Assembly: GCA_028826165.1 (NCBI GenBank)
Contig: JAPDFW010000147.1
Coordinates: forward strand, 186,001-250,000
DNA length: 64,000 nucleotides
Source: Anaeramoeba ignava BMAN
Taxonomy: Eukaryota; Protista; Anaeramoebae
Direction of reading: 5' to 3'
Part shown: positions 315 through 36,850 of the stretch, one piece after another
Layout of the letters: each line of letters starts with the position of its first letter
Numbering within the stretch: position 1 is the first letter of the stretch
The notes under the pieces: generated by a model
What the model saw: only the letters and a program-made list of their open reading frames with translations
What the model was told of the DNA's origin: nothing
Databases searched by the model: none
Translations under genes and position numbers: made by a program

Positions 315-3114
315 ATGTTTTATCAATTCCTTTCAAAAATTTTATTATTAATTTTTTTAATTAAAATTATAAATACTGGAAATGCAAGTGTTTCAGTTTG
401 TGGATTTCTTTTTAGTAATGATTGTTTTCTTTGCAATTATGAATTAAATTGCGGACTTTTTTGTTCAGGAGTAAATTTTATTATTATAAAATAATAAAAA
501 ACTTTTTTTTTTTCATTTAACCATCATTTAAATTATCTTATTATCTTATTACTATTTCTATTTTCATTCTCTTTTCTTTTTAATAAAATTAATATTTGAA
601 ATTAAAATCAAAATTAAAATTAAAATTGAAATTAAAATTAAAATTAAAATTGATTTTAAAATTAATATTTTAATTAAAATTAAAATTAAAATTAAAATTA
701 AAAATTTATTTTAAAATTAAAATTAAAATTAAAATTAAAATTAAAATTAAAATTAAAATTAAAATTAAAATTAAAATTAAAAATTAAAATTAAAATTAAA
801 ATTAAAAATAAAAAATTAAATTTAAATTTAAAAATAAAAATTAAAAAAAAAGAAAATAATGTTTGAATTAAAATTAAAATTAAAATTAAAATTAAAATTA
901 AAATTAAAATTAAAATTAAAATTTCAAAATTAAAATTAAAATTAAAATTCAAAAATTAAAATTAAAATTAAAATTAAAATTAAAATTAAAATTAAAATTA
1001 ATAAAACTTTTTCATTTAAAATTAAAATTAAAATTAAAATTAAAATTAAAATCAAAATTAATTAAAATTAAAATTTCTAAAAATTAAAATTAAAATTAAA
1101 ATTAAAATCAAAATTAAAATTAAAAATTAAAAATTAAAATTAAAATTAAAATTAAAATTAAAATTAAAAATTAAAATTAAAATTAAAATTAAAATTAAAA
1201 TTAAAATTAAAATTAAAATTAAAATTAAAATTAAAATTAAAATTAAAATTAAAAATTAAAATTAAAATTAAAACCAAAAATTAAAATTAAAATTAAAATT
1301 AAAATTAAAATTAAAATTAAAATTAAAATTAAAATTAATATTTAAATTAAAAATCAAAATTAAAATTAAAATTAAAATTAAAATCAAAATTAAAATTAAA
1401 ATTAAAATTAAAATTAAAATTAAAATTAAAATTAAAATTAAAATTAAAATTAAAATTAAAATTAAAATTAAAATTAAAATTAAAATTAAAATTAAAATTA
1501 AAATTAAAATTAAAATTCATTTTTGATATTAAAATAAAAATTAAAATTGATATTAAAATTAAAATTAAAATTAAAATTAAAATTGAAATTAAAATTCATT
1601 TTTAAAATTAAAATTCATTTTTGAAATTAAAATTCATTTTTGAAATTAAAATTCATTTTTGAAATTAAAATAAGGCAACACCATATTGCACAAGTGACAC
1701 AGAATGTTTACTAGATTATTCCCCAGTCAGTCTAGAAAGTTGCACTGCATGGAATAATTTAACAGAATTCGACGGAAATGCAAGTTGCAAAGCATGTATA
1801 CTTCACAATGGAACATTCAACAGCAGCGCAGAAAAATGTATAGAAACAGGAGGAGATATCACAAACTACACAAATTGCCCAACTTTATCACCAGCAGAAT
1901 GTGAAATGTGGCATACATTAATAGAATGCCCAACGGATTCGGGATGTTTTTGGAACTGGACAACAGGAACAAGTTATCCACGATGCACAACAGCTGGAGT
2001 AGCAATATTGAACCCTAATTCACCACCGTGTATCATGGAAGCGACCTGCGAAGAATGCGTTGGGAACGGATGCATGTGGTGTGGAAAGGATGATCAAGAT
2101 TACGGATTCTGCTCTTATAACGATTCAGGTTGCCAGCTCAGTGGATTTGTGGATAAAACATGCAATCCACAAACAGACACTTCGGATTGTTTATCACGAA
2201 CAACTTGTTTAGAATGTTTATCAGACGGATTAGGATGTAAATGGTGCGATTTTGATTACGAAGGAATATCCGGAAGTTGTATTCCTCCGTTGCAAAATTG
2301 CAGCAATGAAGACGAAACAATGATATTTAATACATCATGCAAAGCGTATTTGAATACGGATTGCATGGATAAGGATTGCGAATCCTGTTTTAATAATGCA
2401 ACATGCAATTGGTGCATTACAAATCAAACAACACTTGAAGGGATATGTTTATATTACAACGCAACACAGGCCTTCAACAGCTGCCAAGTCGAGTATCTTG
2501 GCGAATGGGGGATCAATAATAGCTATTGTGCAAGTTCCAACCTCACAAATTGTCTGAGCCAGACATCATGCACCCCATGCCAGGAAAACGAGTGCGCTTG
2601 GTGTCTTCTTCCCAACTCAGACCCTTTATGTCTTACAAACTCATCATGTGATTCAAACCAAGGAATCCAAATTTCTAACTGCAACCACTCAAATCTTGAC
2701 ACTTATAACTGTGAAAATTTATCTAATTGTTCGGATTGCTTTGATCAAGCGCCGTTCTGCAAGTTTATTTACTCCGGCGAAAATTTCACTCAGACAAACT
2801 GCTCTTTATGGTCAATTCCTTTCGATTCACAAGAAGACTACTTTGAAGCTACTACTTGCGACCCCTTTGTTCTTTGTCAGGAAAGAGCAAACTGCTCGGA
2901 TTGTATTTCTCTTTCTGCAGACTTTACTTGTCTTTGGTGCATTTCTGATTTGGATCCTTCAAATACTTCTTGTATTCTTTCTACTCATAATATTAATAAT
3001 TTCACTTGTAATCCAACTTGTCCTTCTAATCCTGAACCAACTCCTTCTATCGCTTCAATTCATATTCTCTCTTTCTTTTCTTTCTTCTTTTTGTTTTTCT
3101 TTCTTTTGTTTTGA
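315..3114 (+). CDS. Cysteine-rich surface/secreted protein with PSI-like (CxxC..CxWC) repeats, ~531 aa, 2 exons
   Basis: Exon 1 is 315-470 (MFYQFLSKILLLIFLIKIINTG.., signal-peptide-like, followed by Cys). The intron is 471-1674 (GTAAAT...TAAG). Exon 2 is 1675-3114, in frame with ORF 1906. Repeated C-xx-C-x(3-6)-C-x-W-C units and many NxS/T sequons; ends in a hydrophobic tail with no cytosolic residues. Confidence 0.8.
596..1670 (+). repeat. (AAAATT)n hexamer microsatellite filling intron 1
   Basis: Visible directly; it is the source of the spurious poly-NF/IL ORF. Confidence 0.95.
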
Positions 3115-3198
3115 TTTTCTTTTTTGATATTTTTATTTCTTTAAAAAAAAATTTTATTTTCAAAAATTTTATTTTCATTTTTATTTTTATTTTCTAAA

Positions 3199-4632
3199 AT
3201 GGAAAATTATTTAAATTTAGAAAAACTTTCAAATGATTTAAAAAATTTATTTCAAAATCAAAATCATGAAGAAAGTTATTTTGATTTTGAAATAATTTGT
3301 GAACAAAATCAAACTTCATTTAAAACTCATAAATCAATTCTTTCTTCAAGAAGTCATTATTTTAAATCTCTTTTCAATTCAAAAATGAAAGAATTTCAAG
3401 AAAATAAATTAATTCTAAAAGATTTTTCAAGTCCAATTATTTCCTCAATTTTGAATTATTTTTATTCAGGAAAAATTGAAATTAATTCAGAAAATGTTGT
3501 TGAAATTTTAATTTTTTCTTCAAAATATTTAATTGATGAATTAACTGAATTTTCTTCAAATTTTATCAAAAACAATTTACAATTTGAAATTGTTGTTGAT
3601 GTTCTTAAATTATCTGAATCAATGAACTTCAAAATATTAATAGATTCTTGTTACCAATTTATTTTTGATAATTTTGATGAATTTATTAAAACTCCTTTTT
3701 TTCTTGAACTTGAAGAAAACCATCTAAATTCAATTTTATCAAATGATTACATTTTAATAAATGAATTTGAGATATTACAATCACTAATAAAATGGGGAAA
3801 ACATAAAATCAATATCAATAAAGAAAACAAAAATTTTGATAAGCAAGAAAAAGAACAATTCCAAAATCAAATTTCAAATGCTATTAAACAGATCAGATTT
3901 ATTGATTTCACAAAAAAAGAACTTGAAACTATTTTGGAAGAAGATTTGATTTCAAGAAGAATTTCTCAAACATTCATCGAATTCCAAATCTTGAAAAACC
4001 AAAAGTTAGAAAGCAAACTCAAGGAATTTCTTCAAAAACATCAAGAAGAAGAACAATTACACATTTTCAAACCAAGAATAAGATTTAAATCAGAAATTAT
4101 TCAAGAAAAAGAGCATTTAATTCTCATAAGAGAATGGATAAATGATGAGGATTTCTTTTCCAAAATGAAAAAGGGATTTTCAGCAAAAAAAGATGGATTT
4201 TCTGCTAAATCTTTTCATGATAAATGTGATAATCAAGGAAAAACATTATTTATTATCAAAACAAAAGATAATTTTATTTTTGGAGGATTTACTCAAGTTG
4301 GATGGATTTCAGGAAGAGGAATATCACACATGAATGATTCACATTCCTTTCTTTTTAGCATCAAAAATCCTACAAATGATGAACCTCAAAAATTCCCAAT
4401 AAAGGAAGGATGTGAAAATATTGCAGTTTGGTATAATCCTGAAAGAGGACCTGCTTTTGGAGGTTATTGTGATATTTGTTTAGATGAAAATCTCACATCA
4501 GGATGGTCTCAATTTGGAAATGCTTATAAAGTTCCTGATGGAATTACACCTTTAACTTATGCATCAAGATGTTATTTGGCTGGTTCTTATAGTGGTTGGA
4601 AAGTTGATGAACTTGAATGCTTTTTTATTTAA
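3199..4632 (+). CDS. BTB/POZ-BACK-TLDc domain protein
   Basis: BTB (DFEIIC..FKTHKSILSSRSHYFKSLF..LNYFYSG), BACK (FLELEENHLNSILSND..EFEILQSLIKW), TLDc (KDGFSAKSFHDKCDNQGKTLFIIKT..FGGFT..SFLFS..GPAFG). Confidence 0.9.
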   Translation: MENYLNLEKLSNDLKNLFQNQNHEESYFDFEIICEQNQTSFKTHKSILSSRSHYFKSLFNSKMKEFQENKLILKDFSSPIISSILNYFYSGKIEINSENVVEILIFSSKYLIDELTEFSSNFIKNNLQFEIVVDVLKLSESMNFKILIDSCYQFIFDNFDEFIKTPFFLELEENHLNSILSNDYILINEFEILQSLIKWGKHKININKENKNFDKQEKEQFQNQISNAIKQIRFIDFTKKELETILEEDLISRRISQTFIEFQILKNQKLESKLKEFLQKHQEEEQLHIFKPRIRFKSEIIQEKEHLILIREWINDEDFFSKMKKGFSAKKDGFSAKSFHDKCDNQGKTLFIIKTKDNFIFGGFTQVGWISGRGISHMNDSHSFLFSIKNPTNDEPQKFPIKEGCENIAVWYNPERGPAFGGYCDICLDENLTSGWSQFGNAYKVPDGITPLTYASRCYLAGSYSGWKVDELECFFI

Positions 4633-4664
4633 GAATTCTTTTCCAAACAACACAAATTAAACAT

Positions 4665-4887
4665 TTTTAATTTTAATTTTAATTTAAATTTTGATTTTAA
4701 TTTTAATTTTAATTTTAATTTTAATTTTAATTTTAATTTTAATTTTAATTTTAATTTAAATTTTAATTTTAATTTTAATTTTAATTTTAATTTTAATTTT
4801 AATTTAATTTTAATTTTAATTTTAATTTTAATTTTAATTTTAATTTTAATTTTAATTTTAATTTTAATTTTAATTTTAATTTTAATT
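4665..4887 (-). repeat. (AAAATT)n on the minus strand, directly after the RCC1-BTB stop codon
   Basis: (AATTTT)n on the + strand. Confidence 0.95.
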
Positions 4888-6678
4888 TTAATTTTGATTA
4901 TTAAATTTAATTAATAAATCAAATAAATTTGGATTTGTTTGATTTAATTGAAAATAATCAATTCCTCTTTCTAATTCATTAATGATTCCTTTTGTAATTT
5001 GAATTTCATCTTTAATTTGATTTGAATAAATCCAATATTCTAATAATTCAAATGATCTATTACTTAATTCACTATAATCTGTAACTTTATTAGAAGTATC
5101 ATTTGTTACAGATAAAAACATTCCTCGATATAATTCACTTCTCATTATTAATATTAATTTTGGAAATTTATATTGTTTTTCTTTTCTTTCAATTATAAAA
5201 TCTTTTTCATTTTCATTTAAATAAATTCTTTTCATTGTTTCTTCAATTTTTTCATTGGAATTTATAATTTCTTTAATTTCAGAATATAATTTTGGATTTA
5301 TTTTGGAATTGTTTGAATAAATCATTTCAAATATTTGATTTGATTCTTTAATTGATTTATTTGAAATAATTTCTTGAAGTTTTTCAATTTCAATTTCATT
5401 TTCATTTTGATTTAATCTATATTTCAATATTAATTTATGAGCTTTAATTATTTCTCCATTTTCTGTTTTAAATGAAATATCACAAAATTCTTTTCTTCTA
5501 AATAATTTTATCAAATCTTCTTCAAGATTGGAAAAAGAAGGAGGAGAATAATAAAGAAATGAATTCTCAAAATTACCACAAAGAACATGATAATTAGAAA
5601 TATTTTCATTAAATCTTAATTTAGGAAGTTCAATTTGAATTGGAATTGGTTTGATCATATATATCTCCAGTTCCTAATTCACCATAATAATTTCTTCCAA
5701 ATCCTATTAATTTCTCTTTCGTTGTTAAAATCAAAGTATGATAACCTCCAACAGAAATTTCAAGAATATTATCATCATTTTCAAATAAAGGTGATTTAAT
5801 TTCAGTAAATTCATAAGTTTTTTGCTCTCTTATATTTTCAGTTTTGCCAAGCTCATTATATAGATAACGACCACATGAATAAAGTTTTCTTTTTGGATTT
5901 TGATTTTGATTTTGATTTTCAATTAACATTATTGAATGAAAATTTCCACATTGAATATCAATTATTTTACCTTTTGGAATATTTTGGATTTGTGTTAATT
6001 TATAGATTTTTGTTTCTTTTCTTGATTCTCCTAATCCAAGTTGACCATAAAATAATTATATCCGCATCCAAATAATTCTTGATTTGAATTTAAAAGAAAA
6101 ACGTGATTTGAAGTATTTCCTGAAAATATTTTAGAAACATTTTTCATTATCAAAATTGGTTTTTCTGTTTCTTTAAGTGTTTCAGAATCAAATCCAAGTT
6201 GACCATAATCATTTGAACCAATTCCATAAACATTTTGATTTGAAGTTAATAAATAAATTGAATGAGCTCCAGAAACAATATCTTCAATTATTCTATCATT
6301 TATATCTTCAATTAATGATGAAATATTGATAAATTCATTTGGATTATTTGGATTAATATATTTTCCTTTGGCAAATACATTTCTTTCTATTGTTAAAATA
6401 GCTTCATTGTAAACACCAACAGTTACTTTTTGAATATTTTCTTCAATTTGAATTTTTTCAGGATTCTGTTTTGAATTTTTTAAGTATTCTATTGCTTTTC
6501 CATTTTCAAAAAGGAAAATTGTTGAAAATCTTCCTGATGAAATTTGTTTAATTTGTTTTTCATTTTCATTTTCATTTTCATTTTCAAATTTAAATTGAAT
6601 TGGTTTTTTTATTTTATTTGGTTCATTTTTGATAAGAGTTGGATATTCATTTTGACCAAAAAATAAAATTTCATTCAT
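4888..6678 (-). CDS. RCC1-repeat + tandem BTB protein, copy 1 (frameshifts near 6050 and 5650; sequence error or pseudogene)
   Basis: ORF pieces 6031-6678, 5630-5929 and 4888-5658 join colinearly with the paralogues. RCC1 motifs GSNDYGQLG, ISVGGYHTLIL, GRNYYGELGTGD; BTB motif CDISFKTENGEIIKAHKLIL. Confidence 0.8.
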
Positions 6679-27979: not shown

Positions 27980-29303
27980 TCAAAAATCGTTATAAATGTA
28001 TTGTTGTTGGAGATTTTGATTCAAAAAAAGTAGAAATGTTAATTACTTATACAAGAAATAAATATCCAGAACAATATGTTCCATCAGTTTTTGATCGTTA
28101 TGTTTCAGATCCGAAGGGGAAACATATCAATTATCTTTATGGAGATGATTATAATCGAATTAGACCTTTAGATTATCCAAAATACATGTTGTTTTAATTT
28201 GTTTTTCTATTGCAAGAAATCAAAAATCATTTGAAAATGTTAAAAAAAATTTGAAGATGAAATTAAAAATTTATATCTCCAAAAGTTCCCAGAAAAGAAA
28301 TTCTTGTTGAACTCAATTCGAATTAAAAATTAGAAAAAAAAGAAGTTTATCTAACTTATCAAAAAGGATTGAAATGGCTAAAAATTTAATGCTTCAAAAA
28401 AATAGAATTGAATGTTCAAACAAGAACAAACAAGAGAAAATTTAAAAAAGTTTTCAAGAATCAAAAAAAAAGAATTTGAGTATGCCGATAAAGGATTATA
28501 AACAATTCAAAAAAAAAAGAAAAAGCAAAATTAAAACAAAAACAAAAAGAAGAACAAAAGAAGAAAAAAGAGGAACAAAAACAAAAAAAAGAAGAATTGA
28601 AGAGAAAAAAAGAAGAAGAGAAATTGAAGAAAAAAAATTTGGATAAATCAATTCCAAAAGTGGAAAATCCAAAAAATCAAGAAAAAGAAAAAGAAAAAGA
28701 AAAAGAAAAAGAAAAAGAAAAAGAAAAAGAAATTATCAAAACAAAATGTGTTGTTTTTGGAGATGAAAATTCTAAAAATGAATTAATATTTGAATTAATT
28801 GGAAAAGAAATATCAAAAGGAAATGAAATTATAAAACCTTTTGGAACTTATCAAAAACAATATATATTTGAAGGAAAAGAAATTGAAATAATATTTCAAA
28901 TACACCTGATAAAATAGATTATGATGGAATTAAACATACATATTATTCTGAAGCAAATTTTTTTTTAATTTGTTTTTCAATAATTTCACTTTCTTCTTTT
29001 GAAAATGTTAAATCAAAATTTATTCCTGAAATTAAACAAAATTTCCCAAATATTCCAATTATTCTTATTGGAAATGAATTTGAAAAAAGAAATAATTCAA
29101 TAATAATTGAAGAATTAAAACAAAATAATTTAGAACCAATTACATATGAAAAAGGAATAAGAACAGCAAAAAAAAGTAAAATGTTAAAATATGTGGAATG
29201 TTCTTTTGAAACTAAAAAGAATTTAACAACAATTTTAGAAACAGTTTCAAGATTAAGTCTTAAATCAAACAATCAAACAGAAAAATCAAATAATCAAAAA
29301 TAA
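27980..29303 (+). pseudogene. Two-domain atypical Rho gene (Rho - K/E-rich linker - divergent Rho-like domain); first domain heavily disrupted
   Basis: YKCIVVGDFDSKKVEMLITY..YPEQYVPSVFD followed by multiple indels. The second domain (KCVVFGDENSKNE..FLICFSI..FENVKSKFIPEI..IILIGNEFEKR..YVECSFE) has one 1-nt deletion near 28900 and a stop at 29301-29303. Confidence 0.7.
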
Positions 29304-30497: not shown

Positions 30498-31178
30498 ATG
30501 AAATCAGTTAAATGTGTTGCTGTTGGAAATGTTGAATCCAAAAAAACGGAAATGTTATATACTTACACAACACAACAATGGCAAAAACATTTCGATCCAA
30601 CTTTTCATAATTATTCATGCAATTACCAACTAGATGGAGATTATATAGGTTTAAGTTTATGGGATACAGCAGGTCAAGAAGATTATGATAGACTGAGACC
30701 TTTATCTTATCCAAATACAAATATTTTTTTGATATGTTTTTCTATTGCTAATCAAAAATCATTTGAAAGTATTAAAAATAAATGGATTCCTGAACTTAAA
30801 GAACATGCTCCAAATGTTCCATTTATTCTTGTTGGAACTCAATTAGAAAAAAGAGACAATCCAAAAACAATTAATAAATTAAAAGAAAAAGGTTTATCTC
30901 CAATTACTTATCAGCAAGGATTTGAACTAGCAAAAGAAATTAATTCTTTTAAATATTTAGAATGTTCTGCAAGAAATAAGGTTAATATTAATGAAGTTAT
31001 TGAAGAAGCAGTTAGAGCTGCTCAAAATCAAACAATGTCGAAAAAACAATTGAAGAAAAAAGAAAGAGAACAATTAAAGAAAAAACAAAAAGAAGAGAAA
31101 TTGAAAAAAAAAGAAGAATTGAAGAAAAAAAAAGAGGAAGAAAAGAAAAAAAAGCAAGAAGAGAAGAAAAAAAAATAA
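30498..31178 (+). CDS. Atypical Rho-family GTPase with a polybasic tail and no CAAX
   Basis: LWDTAGQEDYDRLRPLSYP, Rho insert, YLECSAR. The P-loop reads GNVESKKT and G4 reads TQLE. Confidence 0.9.
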   Translation: MKSVKCVAVGNVESKKTEMLYTYTTQQWQKHFDPTFHNYSCNYQLDGDYIGLSLWDTAGQEDYDRLRPLSYPNTNIFLICFSIANQKSFESIKNKWIPELKEHAPNVPFILVGTQLEKRDNPKTINKLKEKGLSPITYQQGFELAKEINSFKYLECSARNKVNINEVIEEAVRAAQNQTMSKKQLKKKEREQLKKKQKEEKLKKKEELKKKKEEEKKKKQEEKKKK

Positions 31179-31185
31179 GAAAAGA

Positions 31186-32215
31186 AACTGAAATCAAAAT
31201 CAAAATCAAAATCAATATCAAAACCAAAATCAAAATCAAAATCAAAATCAAAATCAAAATCAAAATCAAAATCAAAATCAAAATCAAAATCAAAATCAAA
31301 ATCAAAATCAAAATTGAAATTGAAATTGAGATGGTTAAACTACTCCTTTTAAAATTAAAATCATGATTAAAATTAAAATCAAAATCAAAATCAAAATCAA
31401 AATCAAAATCAAAATCAAAATCAAAATCAAAATCAAAATCAAAATCAAAATCAAAATCAAAATCAAAATCAAAATCAAAATCAAAATCGAAAAAATCAAA
31501 ATCAAAATCAAAATCCAAAATTGAAATCAAAATCAAAATCAAAATCCAAAATCAAAATCAAAATCAAAATCAAAATCAAAATCAAAATCAAAATCAAAAT
31601 CAAAATCAAAATCAAAATTGAAATTGAAATCAAAATTAAAATCAAAATCAAAATCAAAATCAAAATCAAAATCAAAATCAAAATCAAAATCAAAATCAAA
31701 ATCAAAATCAAAATCAAAATCAAAATCAAAATCAAAATCAAAATCAAAATCAAAATCAAAATCAAAATCAAAATCAAAATCAAAATCAAAATTAAAATCC
31801 AAATTCAAATCAAAATCAAAATCAAATTCAAAATCAAAATCAAAATTGAAATTGAAATTGAGATGGTTAAACTACTCCTTTTAAAATTAAAATTATGATT
31901 AAAATTAAAATCAAAATCAAAATCAAAATCAAAATCAAAATCAAAATTAAAATCCAAAATCAAAATCAAAATCAAAATCAAAATCAAAATCAAAATCAAA
32001 ATCAAAATCAAAATCAAATTCAAAATCAAAATTAAAATCAAAATCAAAATCAAAATTGAAATCAAAATTGAAATCAAAATTAAAATCAAAATCAAAATCA
32101 AAATCAAATTCAAAATTGAAATTGAAATTGAGATGGTTAAACTACTCCTTTTAAAATTGAAATCAAAATCAAAATGAAAATCAAAATCAAAATGAAAATC
32201 AAAACCAAAATCAAA
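31186..32215 (+). repeat. (AAAATC)n microsatellite containing three copies of a GAGATGGTTAAACTACTCCTTTT cassette
   Basis: Cassette copies at 31328-31350, 31860-31882 and 32130-32152. Confidence 0.9.
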
Positions 32216-32299
32216 AATTCCAAATTTAAAAAAAATAAAAAATTTTGCTTTTTTTTATTTTTCATTTTTCATTTTTCATTTTTTAAAAAAAAAAAGAAA

Positions 32300-34857
32300 A
32301 TGTCAGAAGAAACAAAGAAACAAGTTAAACTAATTATTGTTGGAGATCAAGAATCAAAAAAAACTGAAATGATAATGACTTATGCAAATGGTCAATATCC
32401 AACAGATTATGTTCCAACAGTTTTTGATAATTACGTAAAGAATTTATTTGTTGATGGAAATGAATTTGAATTAAGTTTATGGGATACAGCAGGACAAGAA
32501 GATTATGATATGCTTAGACCTTTAGCTTATCCTGGAACAAATGTTGTTTTAATTTGTTTTTCTATTGATAACAAAAATTCATTTGAAAATGTTAAAAACA
32601 AATGGATTCCTGAAATCAATCAATATCTTCCAAATGTTCCATTTATTCTTGTTGGAACTCAAAGTGAATTAAGAGATGATTTCCAAACTATTAATAAATT
32701 ATCACAAAAAGGATTATCTCCAATTAGTTATCAACAAGGATTTGGTTTATCAATAGAAGTTAAAGCTACTAAGTATATTGAATGTTCTGCTAGAAATCAA
32801 GTTAATATAAATGAAGTTTTTGAAGAAGCAGTTAGAGCTGTTAATTATTCTTCAGAATTTGATACTACAGAAAATTATTCTGAACAACAAAACCCATTTG
32901 ATGTTGGATTTGAAAAACCATTTGATATTGGATTTGAAAAACCATTACAAACCAATGAGACAGCATATCAAGAAGAAACAAAGAAACAAGTTAAACTAAT
33001 TATTGTTGGAGATCAAGAATCAAAAAAAACCGAAATGATAATGACTTATGCAAATGGTCAATATCCAACAGATTATGTTCCAACAGTTTTTGATAATTAT
33101 ATAAAGAATTTATTTATTGATGGAAATGAATTTGAATTAGGCTTATGGGATACAGCAGGACAAGATGATTACGATATGCTTAGACCTTTAGCTTATCCTG
33201 GAACAAATGTTGTTTTGATTTGTTTTTCTATTGATAACAAAAATTCATTTGAAAATGTTAAAAACAAATGGGTTCCTGAAATCAATCAATATCTTCCAAA
33301 TGTTCCATTTATTCTTGTTGGAACTCAAAGTGAATTAAGAGATGATTTCCAAACTATCAATAAATTATCACAAAAAGGATTATCTCCAATTAGTTATCAA
33401 CAAGGATTTGGTTTATCAATGGAAGTTAAAGCTACTAAGTATATTGAATGTTCTGCTAGAAATCAAGTTAATATTAATGAAGTTTTTGAAGAAGCAGTTA
33501 GAGCTGTTAATTATTCTTCAGAATTTGATACTACAGAAAATTATTCTGAACAACAAAAACCCATTTGATTTTGGATTTGAAAAACCATTTGATGTTGGAT
33601 TTGAAAAACCATTACAAACCAATGAAACAGCATATCAAGAAGAAACAAAGAAACAAGTTAAATTAGTTATTGTTGGAGATCAAGAATCAAAAAAAACTGA
33701 AATGATAATGACTTATGCAAATGGTCAATATCCAACAGATTATGTTCCAACAATTTTTGATAATTATATAAAGAATTTATTTGTTGATGGAAAGTGAATT
33801 TGAATTAGACTTATGGGATACAGCACCTCAAGAAGATTATGATATGACTTAGACCTTTAACTTATCCTGGAACAAATGTTGTTTTGATTTGTTTTTCTAT
33901 TGATAACAAAGAATCATTTGAAAATGTTAAAAACAAATGGATTCCTGAAATTCAACATCACTGTACAAATGTTCCTTTTATTCTTGTTGGAACTCAAAGT
34001 GAATTAAGAGATGATTTCCAAACTATCAATAAATTATCACAAAAAGGATTATCTCCAATTAGTTATCAACAAGGATTTGGTTTATCAATAGAAGTTAAAG
34101 CTACTAAATATATTGAATGTTCTGCTAGAAATCAAGTTAATATAAATGAAGTTTTTGAAGAAGCAGTTAGAGCTGTTAATTATTCTTCAGAATTTGATAC
34201 TACAGAAAATTATTCTGAACAACAAAAACCATTTGATGTTGTGGATTTGAAAAACCATTTGATATTGGATTTGAAAAACCATTACAAATCAATGAAACAG
34301 CATATCAAGAAGAAACAAAGAAATCAATTAAATGTGTTTTTGTTGGAGATCAAGAATCAAAAAAAACCGAAATGATAATGACTTATGCAAATGGTCAATA
34401 TCCAACAGATTATGTTCCAACAGTTTTTGACAATTACGTAAAGAATTTATTTGTTGATGGAAATGAATTTGAATTAGGTTTATGGGATACAGCACCTCAA
34501 GAAGATTATGATAGACTTAGACCTTTATCTTATCCAAATACAAATGTTGTTTTAATTTGTTTTTCTATTGTTAATCAAAAATCATTTGAAAATGTTAAAA
34601 ACAAATGGGTTCCTGAAATCAATCAATATCTTCCAAATGTTCCATTTATTCTTGTTGGAACTCAAAGTGAATTAAGAGATGATTTCCAAACTATTAATAA
34701 ATTATCACAAAAAGGATTATCTCCAATTAGTTATCAACAAGGATTTGGTTTATCAATAGAAGTTAAAGCTACTAAATATATTGAATGTTCTGCTAGAAAT
34801 CAAATCAATTTAAATGAAGTTTTTGAAGAAGCAGTTAGAGTTGGTTCTTTTTATTAA
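32300..34857 (+). CDS. Protein with four tandem Rho-like domains (~850 aa if 5 inserted bases are errors)
   Basis: 666-bp unit with starts at 32306, 32972, 33639 and 34309. Units 1-2 are in one open frame. Relative to unit 1 there are extra bases near 33560 (+1), 33794 (+1), 33847 (+1) and 34241 (+2). Each domain has GDQESKKT, YVPT(V/I)FDNY, WDTA(G/P)Q, GTQSELR and ECSAR. Confidence 0.8.
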
Positions 34858-34994
34858 AACTTTTAAAACATTCTTTCTTTTTCTTTCATCATTTTCTTTT
34901 CATCATTTTCTTTTTCTTTTTCTTTTTCTTTCATCATTTTCTTTCATCATTTTCTTTAATTCAAAAAAAGAATAAAAAATCAAAAATCCATTTT

Positions 34995-35303
34995 TTTCTT
35001 TTTGAAAATGTTAAATTAAAATTTATTCCTGAAATTAAACAAAATTTCCCAAATATTCCAATTATTCTTATTGGAAATGAATTTGAAAAAAGAAATAATT
35101 CAATAATAATTGAAGAATTAAAACAAAATAATTTAGAACCAATTACATTTGAAAAAGGAATAAGAACAGCAAAAAAAAGTAAAATGTTAAAATATTTGGA
35201 ATGTTCTTTTGAAACTAAAAAGAATCTAACAACAATTTTAGAAACAGTTTCAAGATTAAGTTTTAAATCAAACAATCAAACAGAAAAATCAAATAATCAA
35301 AAA
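34995..35303 (+). pseudogene. Orphan 3' fragment of the divergent second Rho-like domain (duplicate of ~28995-29303)
   Basis: Near-identical to 28995-29300 but preceded by unrelated sequence. Confidence 0.75.
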
Positions 35304-35558
35304 TAATTTTTCTTCTTTTTCTTTTTCTTCTTCTTTTTTTTGGATTAATTTTAAGAAAATTTAAATAAAAAATAATTTTAATTTTTAATATTAAATCTTT
35401 TAAATTTCCTCAAATAAATAAAATAATAAAGGAAAAATAAATTTTTAATTAAATTATTTCTTATTCCAAATTTTTTTTTCCTCTTTTTTAATTTTTTTTT
35501 TTTCATTTTTTTATTTTCAAAACAAAATTAATAAAAAGAAAATATCAATTTAATTCCA

Positions 35559-36850
35559 ATGCCTGGTTATAAATGTGTTTTTGTTGGAGATAAAGAATCA
35601 AAAAAAACAGAAATGATAATTACTTATTTGAAAGGTGAATATCCAGAAAAATATGTTCCATCAGTTTTTGAAAATCAAGATGTATATGTTGAATTAGAAA
35701 GGAAAACATTTCAATTACGTTTATGGGATACAGGAGGTCAAAATGATTATGATAGACTTAGACCTTTATCTTATCCAAATACAAATGTTGTTTTAATTTG
35801 TTTTTCTATTGTTAATCAAAAATCATTTGAAAATGTTAAAAACAAATGGATTCCTGAAATTCAACATTTTTGTCCAAAAGTTCCATTTATTTTAGTTGGA
35901 ACTGAATTAGATAAAAGAGATGATCAAGAAACAATTAATGAATTAAAAGAAAAAGGTTTATCTCCAATTACTTATCAACAAGGATTGGAAATGGCTAAAG
36001 AATTTAAAGCTTTTAATTATATTGAATGTTCTGCAAGAAAACAACAAAATTTAAAAGAAGTTTTTCAAGAAGCAGTTAGAGCATCTAGAAATCCAAAATA
36101 TTATATACAATTCAAAAAGAAGAAAGAAAAAGAAGAAAAAGCAAAATTAAAACAAAAACAAAAAGAAGAACAAAAGAAGAAAAAAGAGGAACAAAAGAAA
36201 AAAAAAGAAAAAGAAAAGAAAAAGCAAAATTGAAAGAAAAAAATTTAAAATGAAAATCAATTCAAAAAGTGGAAAAAACCAAAAATTTTTAAAATAAAAG
36301 AAATTATCAAAAAGAAAAAGAAAAAGAAAAAAAAAGAAAAAGAAAAAGAAAATAAAAGAAATATCAAAACAAAATAATTGGAATTAAATTTAAAAAAATT
36401 AATATTTGAATTAATTTGAAAGAAATATCAAAAAGGAAATCCTTTTATAAAAACCTTTTTGGAACTTATCAAAAAAATATATATTTGAAGGAAAAGAAAT
36501 TGAAATAATATTTCAAGATAAAACCTGATAAAAATTTAATGGCGAAGCAAATTTTTAATTTATTTTTTGAAATATAGATTTTATTTTCTTTAAAATGTTA
36601 AATCAAAATTTTTAATCTGAAATTAAACAAAATTTCCCAAAATAAATTAAAAAGAAATAATTCAATAATAATTGAAGAATTAAAAACAAAATTTTTGAAA
36701 ACCAATTACATATGAAAAAGGAATAAGAACAGCAAAAATAAAATGTTAAAATAATGGAATGTTCTTTTTAAAAATAAAAAGAATTTAACAAAATTTTTAA
36801 AAACAGTTTAAAGATTTGAATTAAATTCAAATTTAATCAAACAGAAAAAA
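35559..36850 (+). CDS. Atypical Rho GTPase (intact ORF 35559-36233) followed by a disrupted copy of the linker and second Rho-like domain
   Basis: GDKESKKT, YVPSVFEN, LWDTGGQNDYDRLRPLSYP, GTELDKR, ECSAR. Sequence 36234-36850 is colinear with 28620-29300 but full of indels. Upstream 35304-35558 duplicates ~27735-27980. Confidence 0.75.

What the first reader, a model, noticed from the sequence alone, without database searches (positions are those of the whole stretch)
32300..34857. Four tandem Rho-like domains in one gene (poly-Rho)
Seen: a 666-bp (222-aa) unit repeated four times, with no stop between units 1 and 2 and a coding linker between all units. The five extra bases that break units 2-4 are small insertions absent from the sister units. 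The units are near-identical but carry distinguishing substitutions (DML/DRL, AYPGT/SYPNT, NQYLP/QHHCT, TAGQ/TAPQ). Unit 4 shares RLRPLSYPNTNVVLICFSIVNQKSF with the 35559 gene, suggesting gene conversion. Small GTPases are normally single-domain, so a tetravalent, non-prenylated, P-loop-defective Rho would be a multivalent effector sponge or scaffold (inference).
Basis: partly seen in the sequence, partly recalled or inferred. Interest (0 to 1): 0.85.

Follow-up and report, generated by a model that had tools for sequence, protein, structure and literature searches.

The report
Tandem Rac-like pseudo-GTPase array, half broken
Four near-identical copies of a Rac-like small-GTPase domain with an altered nucleotide pocket lie head to tail in an Anaeramoeba ignava gene cluster, but as assembled only the first two form one open gene (422 aa) and the last two look like decaying copies.

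Summary
Four tandem units start at 32303, 32969, 33636 and 34306 (periods 666/667/670 bp, 91-97% identical). Five inserted bases break the frame: A at 33555, G at 33794, A at 33847 and TG at 34240-41. Each unit aligns without gaps to human Rac1 residues 3-178. The P-loop reads GDQESKKT (G15K), G4 reads TQSE (D118E), and there is no CAAX box.

The public record already models this locus as one 888-aa hypothetical protein, M0811_03444. That model crosses each break with a "intron" of coding-like composition (68-80% A+T, against about 92% for real introns). These introns delete essential G-domain parts, so I read them as predictor artefacts.

My best reading (about 0.55) is a recently amplified array. 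It has one intact 422-aa two-domain pseudo-GTPase ORF (32300-33568) and two decaying downstream units. It sits in a birth-and-death Rho cluster with gene conversion, including a 105-nt exact tract shared with the 35559 gene.

Assembly error hiding a true four-domain gene therefore stays at about 0.2. Uninterrupted two-domain Rho ORFs occur elsewhere in this genome, and three-domain ORFs occur on other eukaryotic contigs. Earlier notes of this scan also record a double Rho pseudo-GTPase and large Rho arrays on other pieces of this genome. Tandem Rho domains are real here, but this locus is not a clean example.

The parts
32300..33568 (+). Intact ORF of 422 aa: two Rac-like pseudo-GTPase domains joined by a 45-aa linker. 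It ends at the TGA created by the +A frameshift.
   Evidence: Pfam Ras, two stretches, E=1.9e-88
32303..32968 (+). Unit 1: G domain (to about 32851) plus a linker holding a 24-bp x2.4 repeat (PFD[VI]GFEK).
   Evidence: gapless alignment to Rac1 residues 3-178
32969..33635 (+). Unit 2. It is in frame with unit 1 until the extra A in the A5 run at 33555-33559 (sister units have A4). The stop is at 33566-33568.
   Evidence: pN/pS against unit 1 = 0.31; 8 synonymous, 10 non-synonymous
33636..34305 (+). Unit 3, broken three times: +G at 33794 (TGA at 33795-97), +A at 33847 (TAG at 33850-52) and +TG at 34240-41. Switch II G60 is replaced by P. A tract at about 33952-33976 (IQHHCT) resembles the 35559-type paralogue.
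34306..34857 (+). Unit 4: a G domain with no internal break but no usable start. The first in-frame ATG is at 34372, after the P-loop. Switch II has G60P. The short tail ends in TAA, with no linker and no CAAX.
34504..34608 (+). 105-nt tract identical to 35745-35849 of the neighbouring 224-aa Rho-like gene: a gene-conversion tract.
33467..33536 (+). 'Intron' 1 of the public 888-aa model (70 nt, 73% A+T). It removes helix alpha5 of unit 2, and exon 2 then begins out of frame (KIILNNKN).
33795..33853 (+). 'Intron' 2 of the public model (59 nt, 68% A+T). It removes beta3 and switch II of unit 3 and spans both single-base insertions.
34241..34320 (+). 'Intron' 3 of the public model (80 nt, 71% A+T). 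It removes the unit 3 linker and spans the +TG.
34840..34970 (+). 'Intron' 4 of the public model (131 nt, 80% A+T). It skips the unit 4 stop codon and joins unit 4 to the downstream half-domain.
35001..35306 (+). 3' half of a second type of pseudo-Rho domain (FENVK...IGNEFEKRNN...). It is the remnant of the C-terminal domain of a di-Rho gene like M0811_09486 on contig C83, and is used as the last exon of the public model.

Best explanation
The locus is a young tandem array made by unequal crossing-over of a 666-bp (222-codon) unit, which is a Rac-like G domain plus a 45-aa linker. It lies in a birth-and-death cluster of atypical Rho genes in Anaeramoeba ignava. Because the unit length is a multiple of three, each added unit at first lengthened one ORF. 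Today only units 1 and 2 remain in one ORF, giving a 422-aa cytosolic protein with two domains and no lipid anchor. A +1 insertion in the unit 2 linker ends translation. Unit 3 has three further frame breaks, and unit 4 has no start. Units 3 and 4 are untranslated, decaying copies that still exchange sequence with neighbouring paralogues by gene conversion. The public 888-aa model joins the pieces with four artefactual introns. Each domain keeps the Rac fold, the Rho insert and the switch I/II surfaces. It carries G12Q/A13E/V14S/G15K in the P-loop and D118E in G4. It is therefore most likely a pseudo-GTPase with absent or altered nucleotide binding. I infer that it acts as a constitutive, bivalent binder (decoy or scaffold) of Rho regulators, above all GEFs, or of effectors. 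Shown here: the anatomy, the frame status, the motif changes, the conversion tract, the paralogy and the nature of the model introns. Inferred: that the breaks are real, that the 422-aa product is made, and what it binds.
For: Unit structure and insertions. The 422-aa ORF has two Ras-family stretches. Gapless alignment to Rac1 residues 3-178 gives the residue equivalences. Units 1 and 2 differ by 8 synonymous and 10 non-synonymous changes (pN/pS 0.31; binomial p=0.015 against neutral site proportions). Unit 3's private changes outside the conversion tract are 6 non-synonymous to 0 synonymous. Units 3 and 4 share G60P in switch II. Three of the four insertion events are not homopolymer changes, and all lie close to unit-specific substitutions, where short reads map uniquely. 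The assembly had Racon x3, Nanopolish and Pilon x2 (PMC11550330). About 31 kb of long ORFs in this window, including 1790-aa and 2369-aa ORFs, are unbroken. The model introns are 68-80% A+T against 91.86% for real A. ignava introns. They are homologous to sequence the same model reads as exon in sister units, and they delete alpha5, beta3/switch II and a linker. The same cluster holds clear pseudogenes with in-frame stops, a deleted DTAGQ motif and a truncated half-domain. Uninterrupted two-domain Rho ORFs elsewhere in the genome show that the di-Rho architecture is genuine here: 456 and 585 aa on C83, 403 aa on C52, 394 aa on C68, 413 aa on C82 and 436-aa KAJ5076570. The ESKKTE-type P-loop is kept in the intact neighbouring genes at 30498 and 35559, despite about 64% identity to the units. 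Rac1 G15A is nucleotide-free and traps GEFs (PMC3408411).
Against: The base assembly is early R9 nanopore data assembled with ABruijn, and the extra A at 33555 sits in an A run, the classic nanopore error context. All four events are insertions, which is odd for real mutations as well as for errors. Unit 4 has no break in 550 bp. No RNA evidence exists for any product: no listed run is on record as RNA, and no transcript-derived protein matched the units at more than 65% identity. dN/dS among cluster paralogues is 0.7-1.4, which is compatible with relaxed constraint on the whole subfamily, though extreme A+T bias depresses dS. The substitution counts are small.
Confidence: 0.55

Rival explanations
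1. The five extra bases are residual assembly or polishing errors in a hard tandem repeat. The true gene is one ORF of about 851 aa with four in-frame Rac-like pseudo-GTPase domains, the reader's poly-Rho.
For: Removing the five bases restores one continuous frame through all four units. All linkers are coding-like and the unit is exactly 222 codons. The assembly derives from R9.4/R9.5 reads, ABruijn v1.0 and Guppy 2.3.5. One insertion lies in an A run. Unit 4 is unbroken. Continuous three-domain Rho ORFs exist on other eukaryotic contigs: L010 (786 aa) and L011 (562 aa).
Against: Three insertions are not homopolymer events and are flanked by unit-specific variants, so Pilon x2 should have corrected them. 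No comparable breaks occur in about 31 kb of long ORFs in the window. Unit 3's private changes are all non-synonymous. Units 3 and 4 carry G60P. Neighbouring copies in the cluster are unambiguous pseudogenes.
Confidence: 0.2
2. The whole array, units 1 and 2 included, is a dead by-product of cluster turnover and makes no protein.
For: There is no RNA or protein evidence. The cluster is rich in decayed copies. Paralogue dN/dS is near 1. Key nucleotide-binding motifs are altered.
Against: A 422-codon ORF stays open in a 79% A+T genome, where stop codons arise easily. Units 1 and 2 show an excess of synonymous differences (p=0.015). The same P-loop variant is conserved in two intact neighbouring genes.
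Confidence: 0.2
3. The public 888-aa spliced model (M0811_03444) is right: four short introns are removed and a four-and-a-half-domain protein is made.
For: All four gaps have GT...AG ends and restore the frame. The annotators had RNA-seq data.
Against: Introns 1-3 have coding composition (68-73% A+T against 91.9%). They are homologous to exons of sister units, each sits exactly on a frame break, and each removes core secondary structure. Exon 2 starts with an out-of-frame reading of the linker.
Confidence: 0.03

Closest known systems
Rac/Cdc42 subfamily of Rho small GTPases (human Rac1, e.g. PDB 1mh1, 6x1g)
   Same: Alignment to Rac1 residues 3-178 is gapless (E about 1e-61; roughly half the residues are identical to Rac-type proteins). 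Switch I (YxPTVFDNY), W56, DTAGQ (units 1-2), the Rho insert and CSA are kept.
   Different: The P-loop reads GDQESKKT (G12Q, A13E, V14S, G15K). G4 reads TQSE (D118E). R66 is M. There is no CAAX box or polybasic-Cys tail. Two domains sit in one ORF and four in the array.
PseudoGTPase domains (e.g. the pG1/pG2 domains of p190RhoGAP, PMC5593906)
   Same: The G-domain fold is kept while G motifs are degenerate. The domains occur in tandem inside one polypeptide. The proposed role is scaffolding or regulation rather than switching.
   Different: The p190 domains are highly divergent and lie inside a large RhoGAP. Here the domains are still Rac-like in sequence, are free-standing, and retain K16, T17, T35, D57 and Q61, so altered rather than absent nucleotide binding is possible.
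Di-Rho ORFs of the same genome (M0811_09486, 456 aa, on C83; KAJ5076570, 436 aa; the 403-aa ORF on C52)
   Same: Two Rho-like domains lie in one uninterrupted ORF joined by a low-complexity linker. The C83 cluster is a 65-80% identical paralogous segment of window 27.7-37.5 kb, and its C-terminal domains carry the related GDENSKKTE P-loop.
   Different: Those genes pair two different domain types: an N-terminal near-canonical domain and a divergent C-terminal one. Some end in CAAX. This locus repeats one domain type at 91-97% identity with its own unique linker.
Engineered nucleotide-free Rac1 G15A / RhoA G17A used as GEF traps
   Same: The second P-loop glycine is replaced. The expected result is loss of nucleotide binding and tight binding of active GEFs (PMC3408411).
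   Different: This is a natural G-to-K change with further P-loop and G4 changes. No binding data exist.
Miro (mitochondrial Rho) and bacterial EngA/Der: proteins with two GTPase domains (my own knowledge; Miro also in PMC11012113)
   Same: More than one small-GTPase-like domain sits in a single chain.
   Different: Their two domains are ancient, divergent and functionally distinct, with EF hands or a KH domain. Neither is a recent tandem repeat of one Rac-like unit.

Membership tests
Rho family small GTPase (Rac/Cdc42-like) | Ras-type G-domain homology | tested here: met
   Pfam PF00071 at E=1.9e-88 with two stretches. phmmer to Rac1 chains at E about 1e-61, gapless over residues 3-178.
Rho family small GTPase (Rac/Cdc42-like) | Rho insert helix between beta5 and alpha4 | tested here: met
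   Rac1 residues 120-137 align without a gap (DDFQTINKLSQKGLSPISY against DDKDTIEKLKEKKLTPITY).
Rho family small GTPase (Rac/Cdc42-like) | G1 P-loop GxxxxGK[ST] | tested here: not met
   All four units read GDQESKKT, with the second glycine (Rac1 G15) replaced by K.
Rho family small GTPase (Rac/Cdc42-like) | G3 DxxG (DTAGQ) in switch II | tested here: inconclusive
   Met in units 1 and 2 (DTAGQ). Not met in units 3 and 4 (DTAPQ).
Rho family small GTPase (Rac/Cdc42-like) | G4 [NT][KQ]xD guanine-specificity motif | tested here: not met
   All units read TQSE, with the Asp (Rac1 D118) replaced by Glu.
Rho family small GTPase (Rac/Cdc42-like) | C-terminal CAAX prenylation box | tested here: not met
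   The 422-aa ORF ends ...QQKPI, unit 4 ends ...VGSFY and the 888-aa model ends ...SNNQK. None has a Cys near the end.
PseudoGTPase (G-domain fold without a normal GTP cycle) | G-domain fold kept while one or more G motifs are lost | tested here: met
   See the rows above: homology to Rac1, with G1 and G4 altered.
PseudoGTPase (G-domain fold without a normal GTP cycle) | No nucleotide binding or no hydrolysis, shown biochemically | not testable with these tools
   This needs mant-nucleotide binding, thermal shift and GTPase assays on the purified domain. K16, T17, T35, D57 and Q61 are retained, so binding cannot be excluded from sequence.
Single gene encoding four Rho domains (poly-Rho) | One uninterrupted reading frame, or verified splicing, across all four units | tested here: not met
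   As assembled there are four frame-breaking insertion events. The bridging introns of the public model look artefactual. Whether the breaks exist in the reads could not be tested.

The most novel reading that the evidence does not exclude
The breaks are assembly errors, or one allele is intact, and A. ignava makes a soluble protein with four Rac-like domains of altered nucleotide pocket. This would be a natural multivalent trap or scaffold for RhoGEFs and effectors. It would belong to a wider, undescribed class of multi-Rho-domain proteins, seen here as uninterrupted two- and three-domain ORFs in this genome and on other eukaryotic contigs.
Probability: 0.2. Interest if true: 0.6.

Novelty: new variant of a known kind. 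Interest (0 to 1): 0.35.

Why it matters
Small GTPases of the Rho family are textbook single-domain, lipid-anchored switches. This genome shows that Rac-like domains can be strung together in one chain. It also shows that a subfamily with a specific P-loop change (G15K, the position whose mutation makes laboratory GEF traps) is kept in intact genes. If the 422-aa product is made, it would be a natural bivalent decoy or scaffold in Rho signalling, and a cheap test case for how pseudo-GTPases arise from active ones. The locus is also a practical warning. The public 888-aa protein for it is probably a gene-prediction construct that hides frame breaks behind false introns, and it would mislead domain-architecture surveys.

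Tried and rejected
No reads were laid. 

Exact-product look-ups for the neighbouring gene and for two ORF pieces across the breaks found nothing. Records of the window's own genome appear to be left out.

Protein searches with length limits did not show the locus's own model. It appeared only when a 786-aa three-domain protein was used as the query. The representative library held no near-identical protein.

I looked for real introns in the C61 Rho array for comparison. The gaps there turned out to be in-frame microsatellite insertions, not introns. I relied on the published intron A+T value instead.

Programmed frameshifting was considered and rejected. Four different sites share no slippery motif, and the same sequences are read in frame in sister units.

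Assembly stutter was rejected as the origin of the four units, because each unit has private codon-level changes and conversion tracts.

Literature searches for tandem Rho domains or Anaeramoeba Rho proteins found nothing relevant.

I did not run structure or complex prediction. Rac1 homology already settles the fold, and no partner is known.

Full report
**What is there.** The window is 20.9% G+C. It is G000:C137:186001-250000 of a 42.8-Mb, 147-contig assembly. Contig lengths of C83 (371,713) and C60 (1,651,858) equal those of records named Anaeramoeba ignava, and the locus's own public protein carries that name. An anchor search and a MAFFT alignment show four head-to-tail units starting at 32303, 32969, 33636 and 34306, with periods of 666, 667 and 670 bp. 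Pairwise identity is 0.973 for units 1-2, 0.952 for 1-3 and 2-3, and 0.91-0.93 for unit 4 against the others. Units 1-3 each comprise a G domain plus a 45-aa linker holding a 24-bp x2.4 repeat. Unit 4 stops eight codons after the G domain. The linker occurs nowhere else in the genome.

**Frame status.** From the ATG at 32300, units 1 and 2 are in frame. An extra A in an A5 run (33555-33559; sister units have A4) leads to a TGA at 33566-33568, giving a 422-aa ORF. Unit 3 carries +G at 33794, +A at 33847 and +TG at 34240-41. Unit 4 has no break, but its first in-frame ATG (34372) lies after the P-loop. Removing the five bases restores one frame through all units.

**What the units are.** Pfam Ras scores E=1.9e-88 with two stretches on the 422-aa ORF. 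Unit 1 aligns to human Rac1 residues 3-178 without a gap, Rho insert included. By that alignment:
- The P-loop is GDQESKKT (G12Q, A13E, V14S, G15K; K16 and T17 kept).
- Switch I and DTAGQ are kept in units 1-2.
- R66 is M.
- G4 is TQSE. Q116 also occurs in Cdc42-type TQxD motifs, so D118E is the real departure.
- CSA is kept.
- Units 3 and 4 share G60P, a three-base change.
- No product ends in CAAX.

A back-translated pattern for this P-loop finds it only in this cluster (the four units plus the genes at 30498 and 35559) and once on C83. Replacement of Rac1 G15 by alanine gives a nucleotide-free protein that binds GEFs tightly (PMC3408411). Whether the natural G15K domain behaves the same way is inference.

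**Context.** Window 27.7-37.5 kb is a paralogous segment, 65-80% identical at the nucleotide level, of a Rho cluster on C83. That cluster holds uninterrupted two-domain ORFs of 456 aa (M0811_09486) and 585 aa. Each pairs a Rac-like N-terminal domain with a divergent C-terminal domain carrying GDENSKKTE/L. Further two-domain ORFs exist on C52 (403 aa, ending in CAAX), C68 (394 aa), C82 (413 aa) and as KAJ5076570 (436 aa). Continuous three-domain Rho ORFs occur on two eukaryotic metagenome contigs: L010 (786 aa, 2361-bp ORF) and L011 (562 aa). Tandem Rho domains are therefore a genuine architecture, not unique to this locus. Earlier notes of this scan record a double Rho pseudo-GTPase and large Rho arrays on other pieces of this genome.

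The cluster also holds plain pseudogenes:
- A decayed di-Rho copy at 27982-29298, with in-frame stops, a deleted DTAGQ and a frameshift.
- The 3' half of a C-terminal-type domain at 35001-35306, just downstream of unit 4.

Gene conversion is active. Unit 4 and the 35559 gene share 105 identical bases (34504-34608 = 35745-35849) in a background of about 75% identity. Unit 3 carries a short tract of 35559 type. Variant patterns among the units are mosaic.

**The public model.** M0811_03444 (888 aa, on the 854,813-bp contig) covers this locus. Mapped back, its exons are 32300-33466, 33537-33794, 33854-34240, 34321-34839 and 34971-35303. Its four introns (70, 59, 80 and 131 nt) have GT...AG ends, but their A+T content is 73, 68, 71 and 80%. 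That is like the coding units (72-73%) and far from the 91.86% reported for A. ignava introns. Each one sits on a frame break. The corresponding sequences in sister units are read as exon by the same model. The introns delete helix alpha5 of unit 2, beta3 and switch II of unit 3, and a linker. Exon 2 starts with an out-of-frame reading of the linker. I conclude that at least introns 1-3 are devices of the gene predictor.

**Are the breaks real?** I could not lay reads, so the evidence is indirect.

Points in favour of real breaks:
- Three of the four events are not homopolymer changes.
- All lie close to unit-specific substitutions, where 150-bp reads map uniquely.
- The assembly had Racon x3, Nanopolish and two Pilon rounds.
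- The same window has about 31 kb of long ORFs without a break, including ORFs of 1177, 1790 and 2369 aa.
- Units 1 and 2 differ by 8 synonymous and 10 non-synonymous changes (pN/pS 0.31, p=0.015), whereas unit 3's private changes outside the conversion tract are 6 non-synonymous to 0 synonymous.

Points against:
- The data are early nanopore reads.
- One event lies in an A run.
- All events are insertions.
- Unit 4 is unbroken.
- The substitution counts are small.

I put real breaks at roughly three in four.

**Mechanism and odds.** The best reading (0.55) is an array grown by in-frame unequal crossing-over. It now encodes a 422-aa two-domain, anchor-less Rac-like pseudo-GTPase followed by two decaying units. 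The product, if made, would bind Rho regulators or effectors constitutively and bivalently. The rivals are a true four-domain ORF hidden by assembly errors (0.2), a wholly dead locus (0.2), and the spliced 888-aa model (0.03). There is no expression evidence for any of them. dN/dS among cluster paralogues is 0.7-1.4. That fits fast or relaxed evolution, but extreme A+T bias lowers dS.

**Novelty.** I found no paper on tandem Rho domains or on Anaeramoeba Rho proteins in the library. The protein is in public databases only as a hypothetical protein. I rate it a new variant of a known kind, of moderate interest. The four-domain claim as stated is not supported by the assembled sequence.

Noticed in passing
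window 27982-29298: A decayed copy of a two-domain Rho gene. The N-terminal domain (GDFDSKKVEM P-loop) has in-frame stops and a deleted DTAGQ. The C-terminal pseudo-Rho domain (GDENS-KNEL) is split by a frameshift. Its 3' half is nearly identical to 35001-35306.
   Followed up: partly
window 31191-32216 and L001 4047-4876: A 1-kb (AAATCA)n microsatellite separates the 30498 gene from unit 1. In the paralogous C83 segment the same repeat is read in frame as a QN-repeat tail of a 429-aa ORF that abuts a 228-aa ORF with a pseudo-Rho domain. That pair may be one di-Rho gene split by repeat-length change.
   Followed up: partly
L001 (G000:C83:6500-16499), ORFs 1062-1715, 1892-3262 and 4236-5525: The otherwise canonical N-terminal Rac-like domains of the C83 cluster have the Mg-binding T17 replaced (GKIS, GKRA). 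This is the position of the classical dominant-negative T17N.
   Followed up: no
L007 6728-6997 and 3640-4056 (G000:C61): Rho genes of the large C61 array carry long in-frame microsatellite insertions (QN/IE repeats) in the beta2-beta3 loop, just before the WDT motif. KAJ5076570 (P0200) shows the same feature.
   Followed up: partly
P0121 (Menidia menidia, 643 aa), residues 237-420: A fish gene model fuses Cdc42 to Cdc42-like copies with P-loop GDQESQKT and G4 TQMELRDD. These are the same G12Q/A13E/V14S and D118E changes as in the Anaeramoeba units, apparently by convergence. Siganus models (P0127, P0135) are two-domain with GDAEVEKT.
   Followed up: no
L010 3001-5361 and L011 3001-4689: Uninterrupted ORFs with three Rho domains on eukaryotic metagenome contigs (ENA). 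One has an N-terminal hydrophobic segment and PS-rich linkers.
   Followed up: partly
window 31860-31890 and 32130-32160: A 30-nt motif (GAGATGGTTAAACTACTCCTTTTAAAATT) recurs inside the microsatellite upstream of unit 1. Its meaning is unknown.
   Followed up: no
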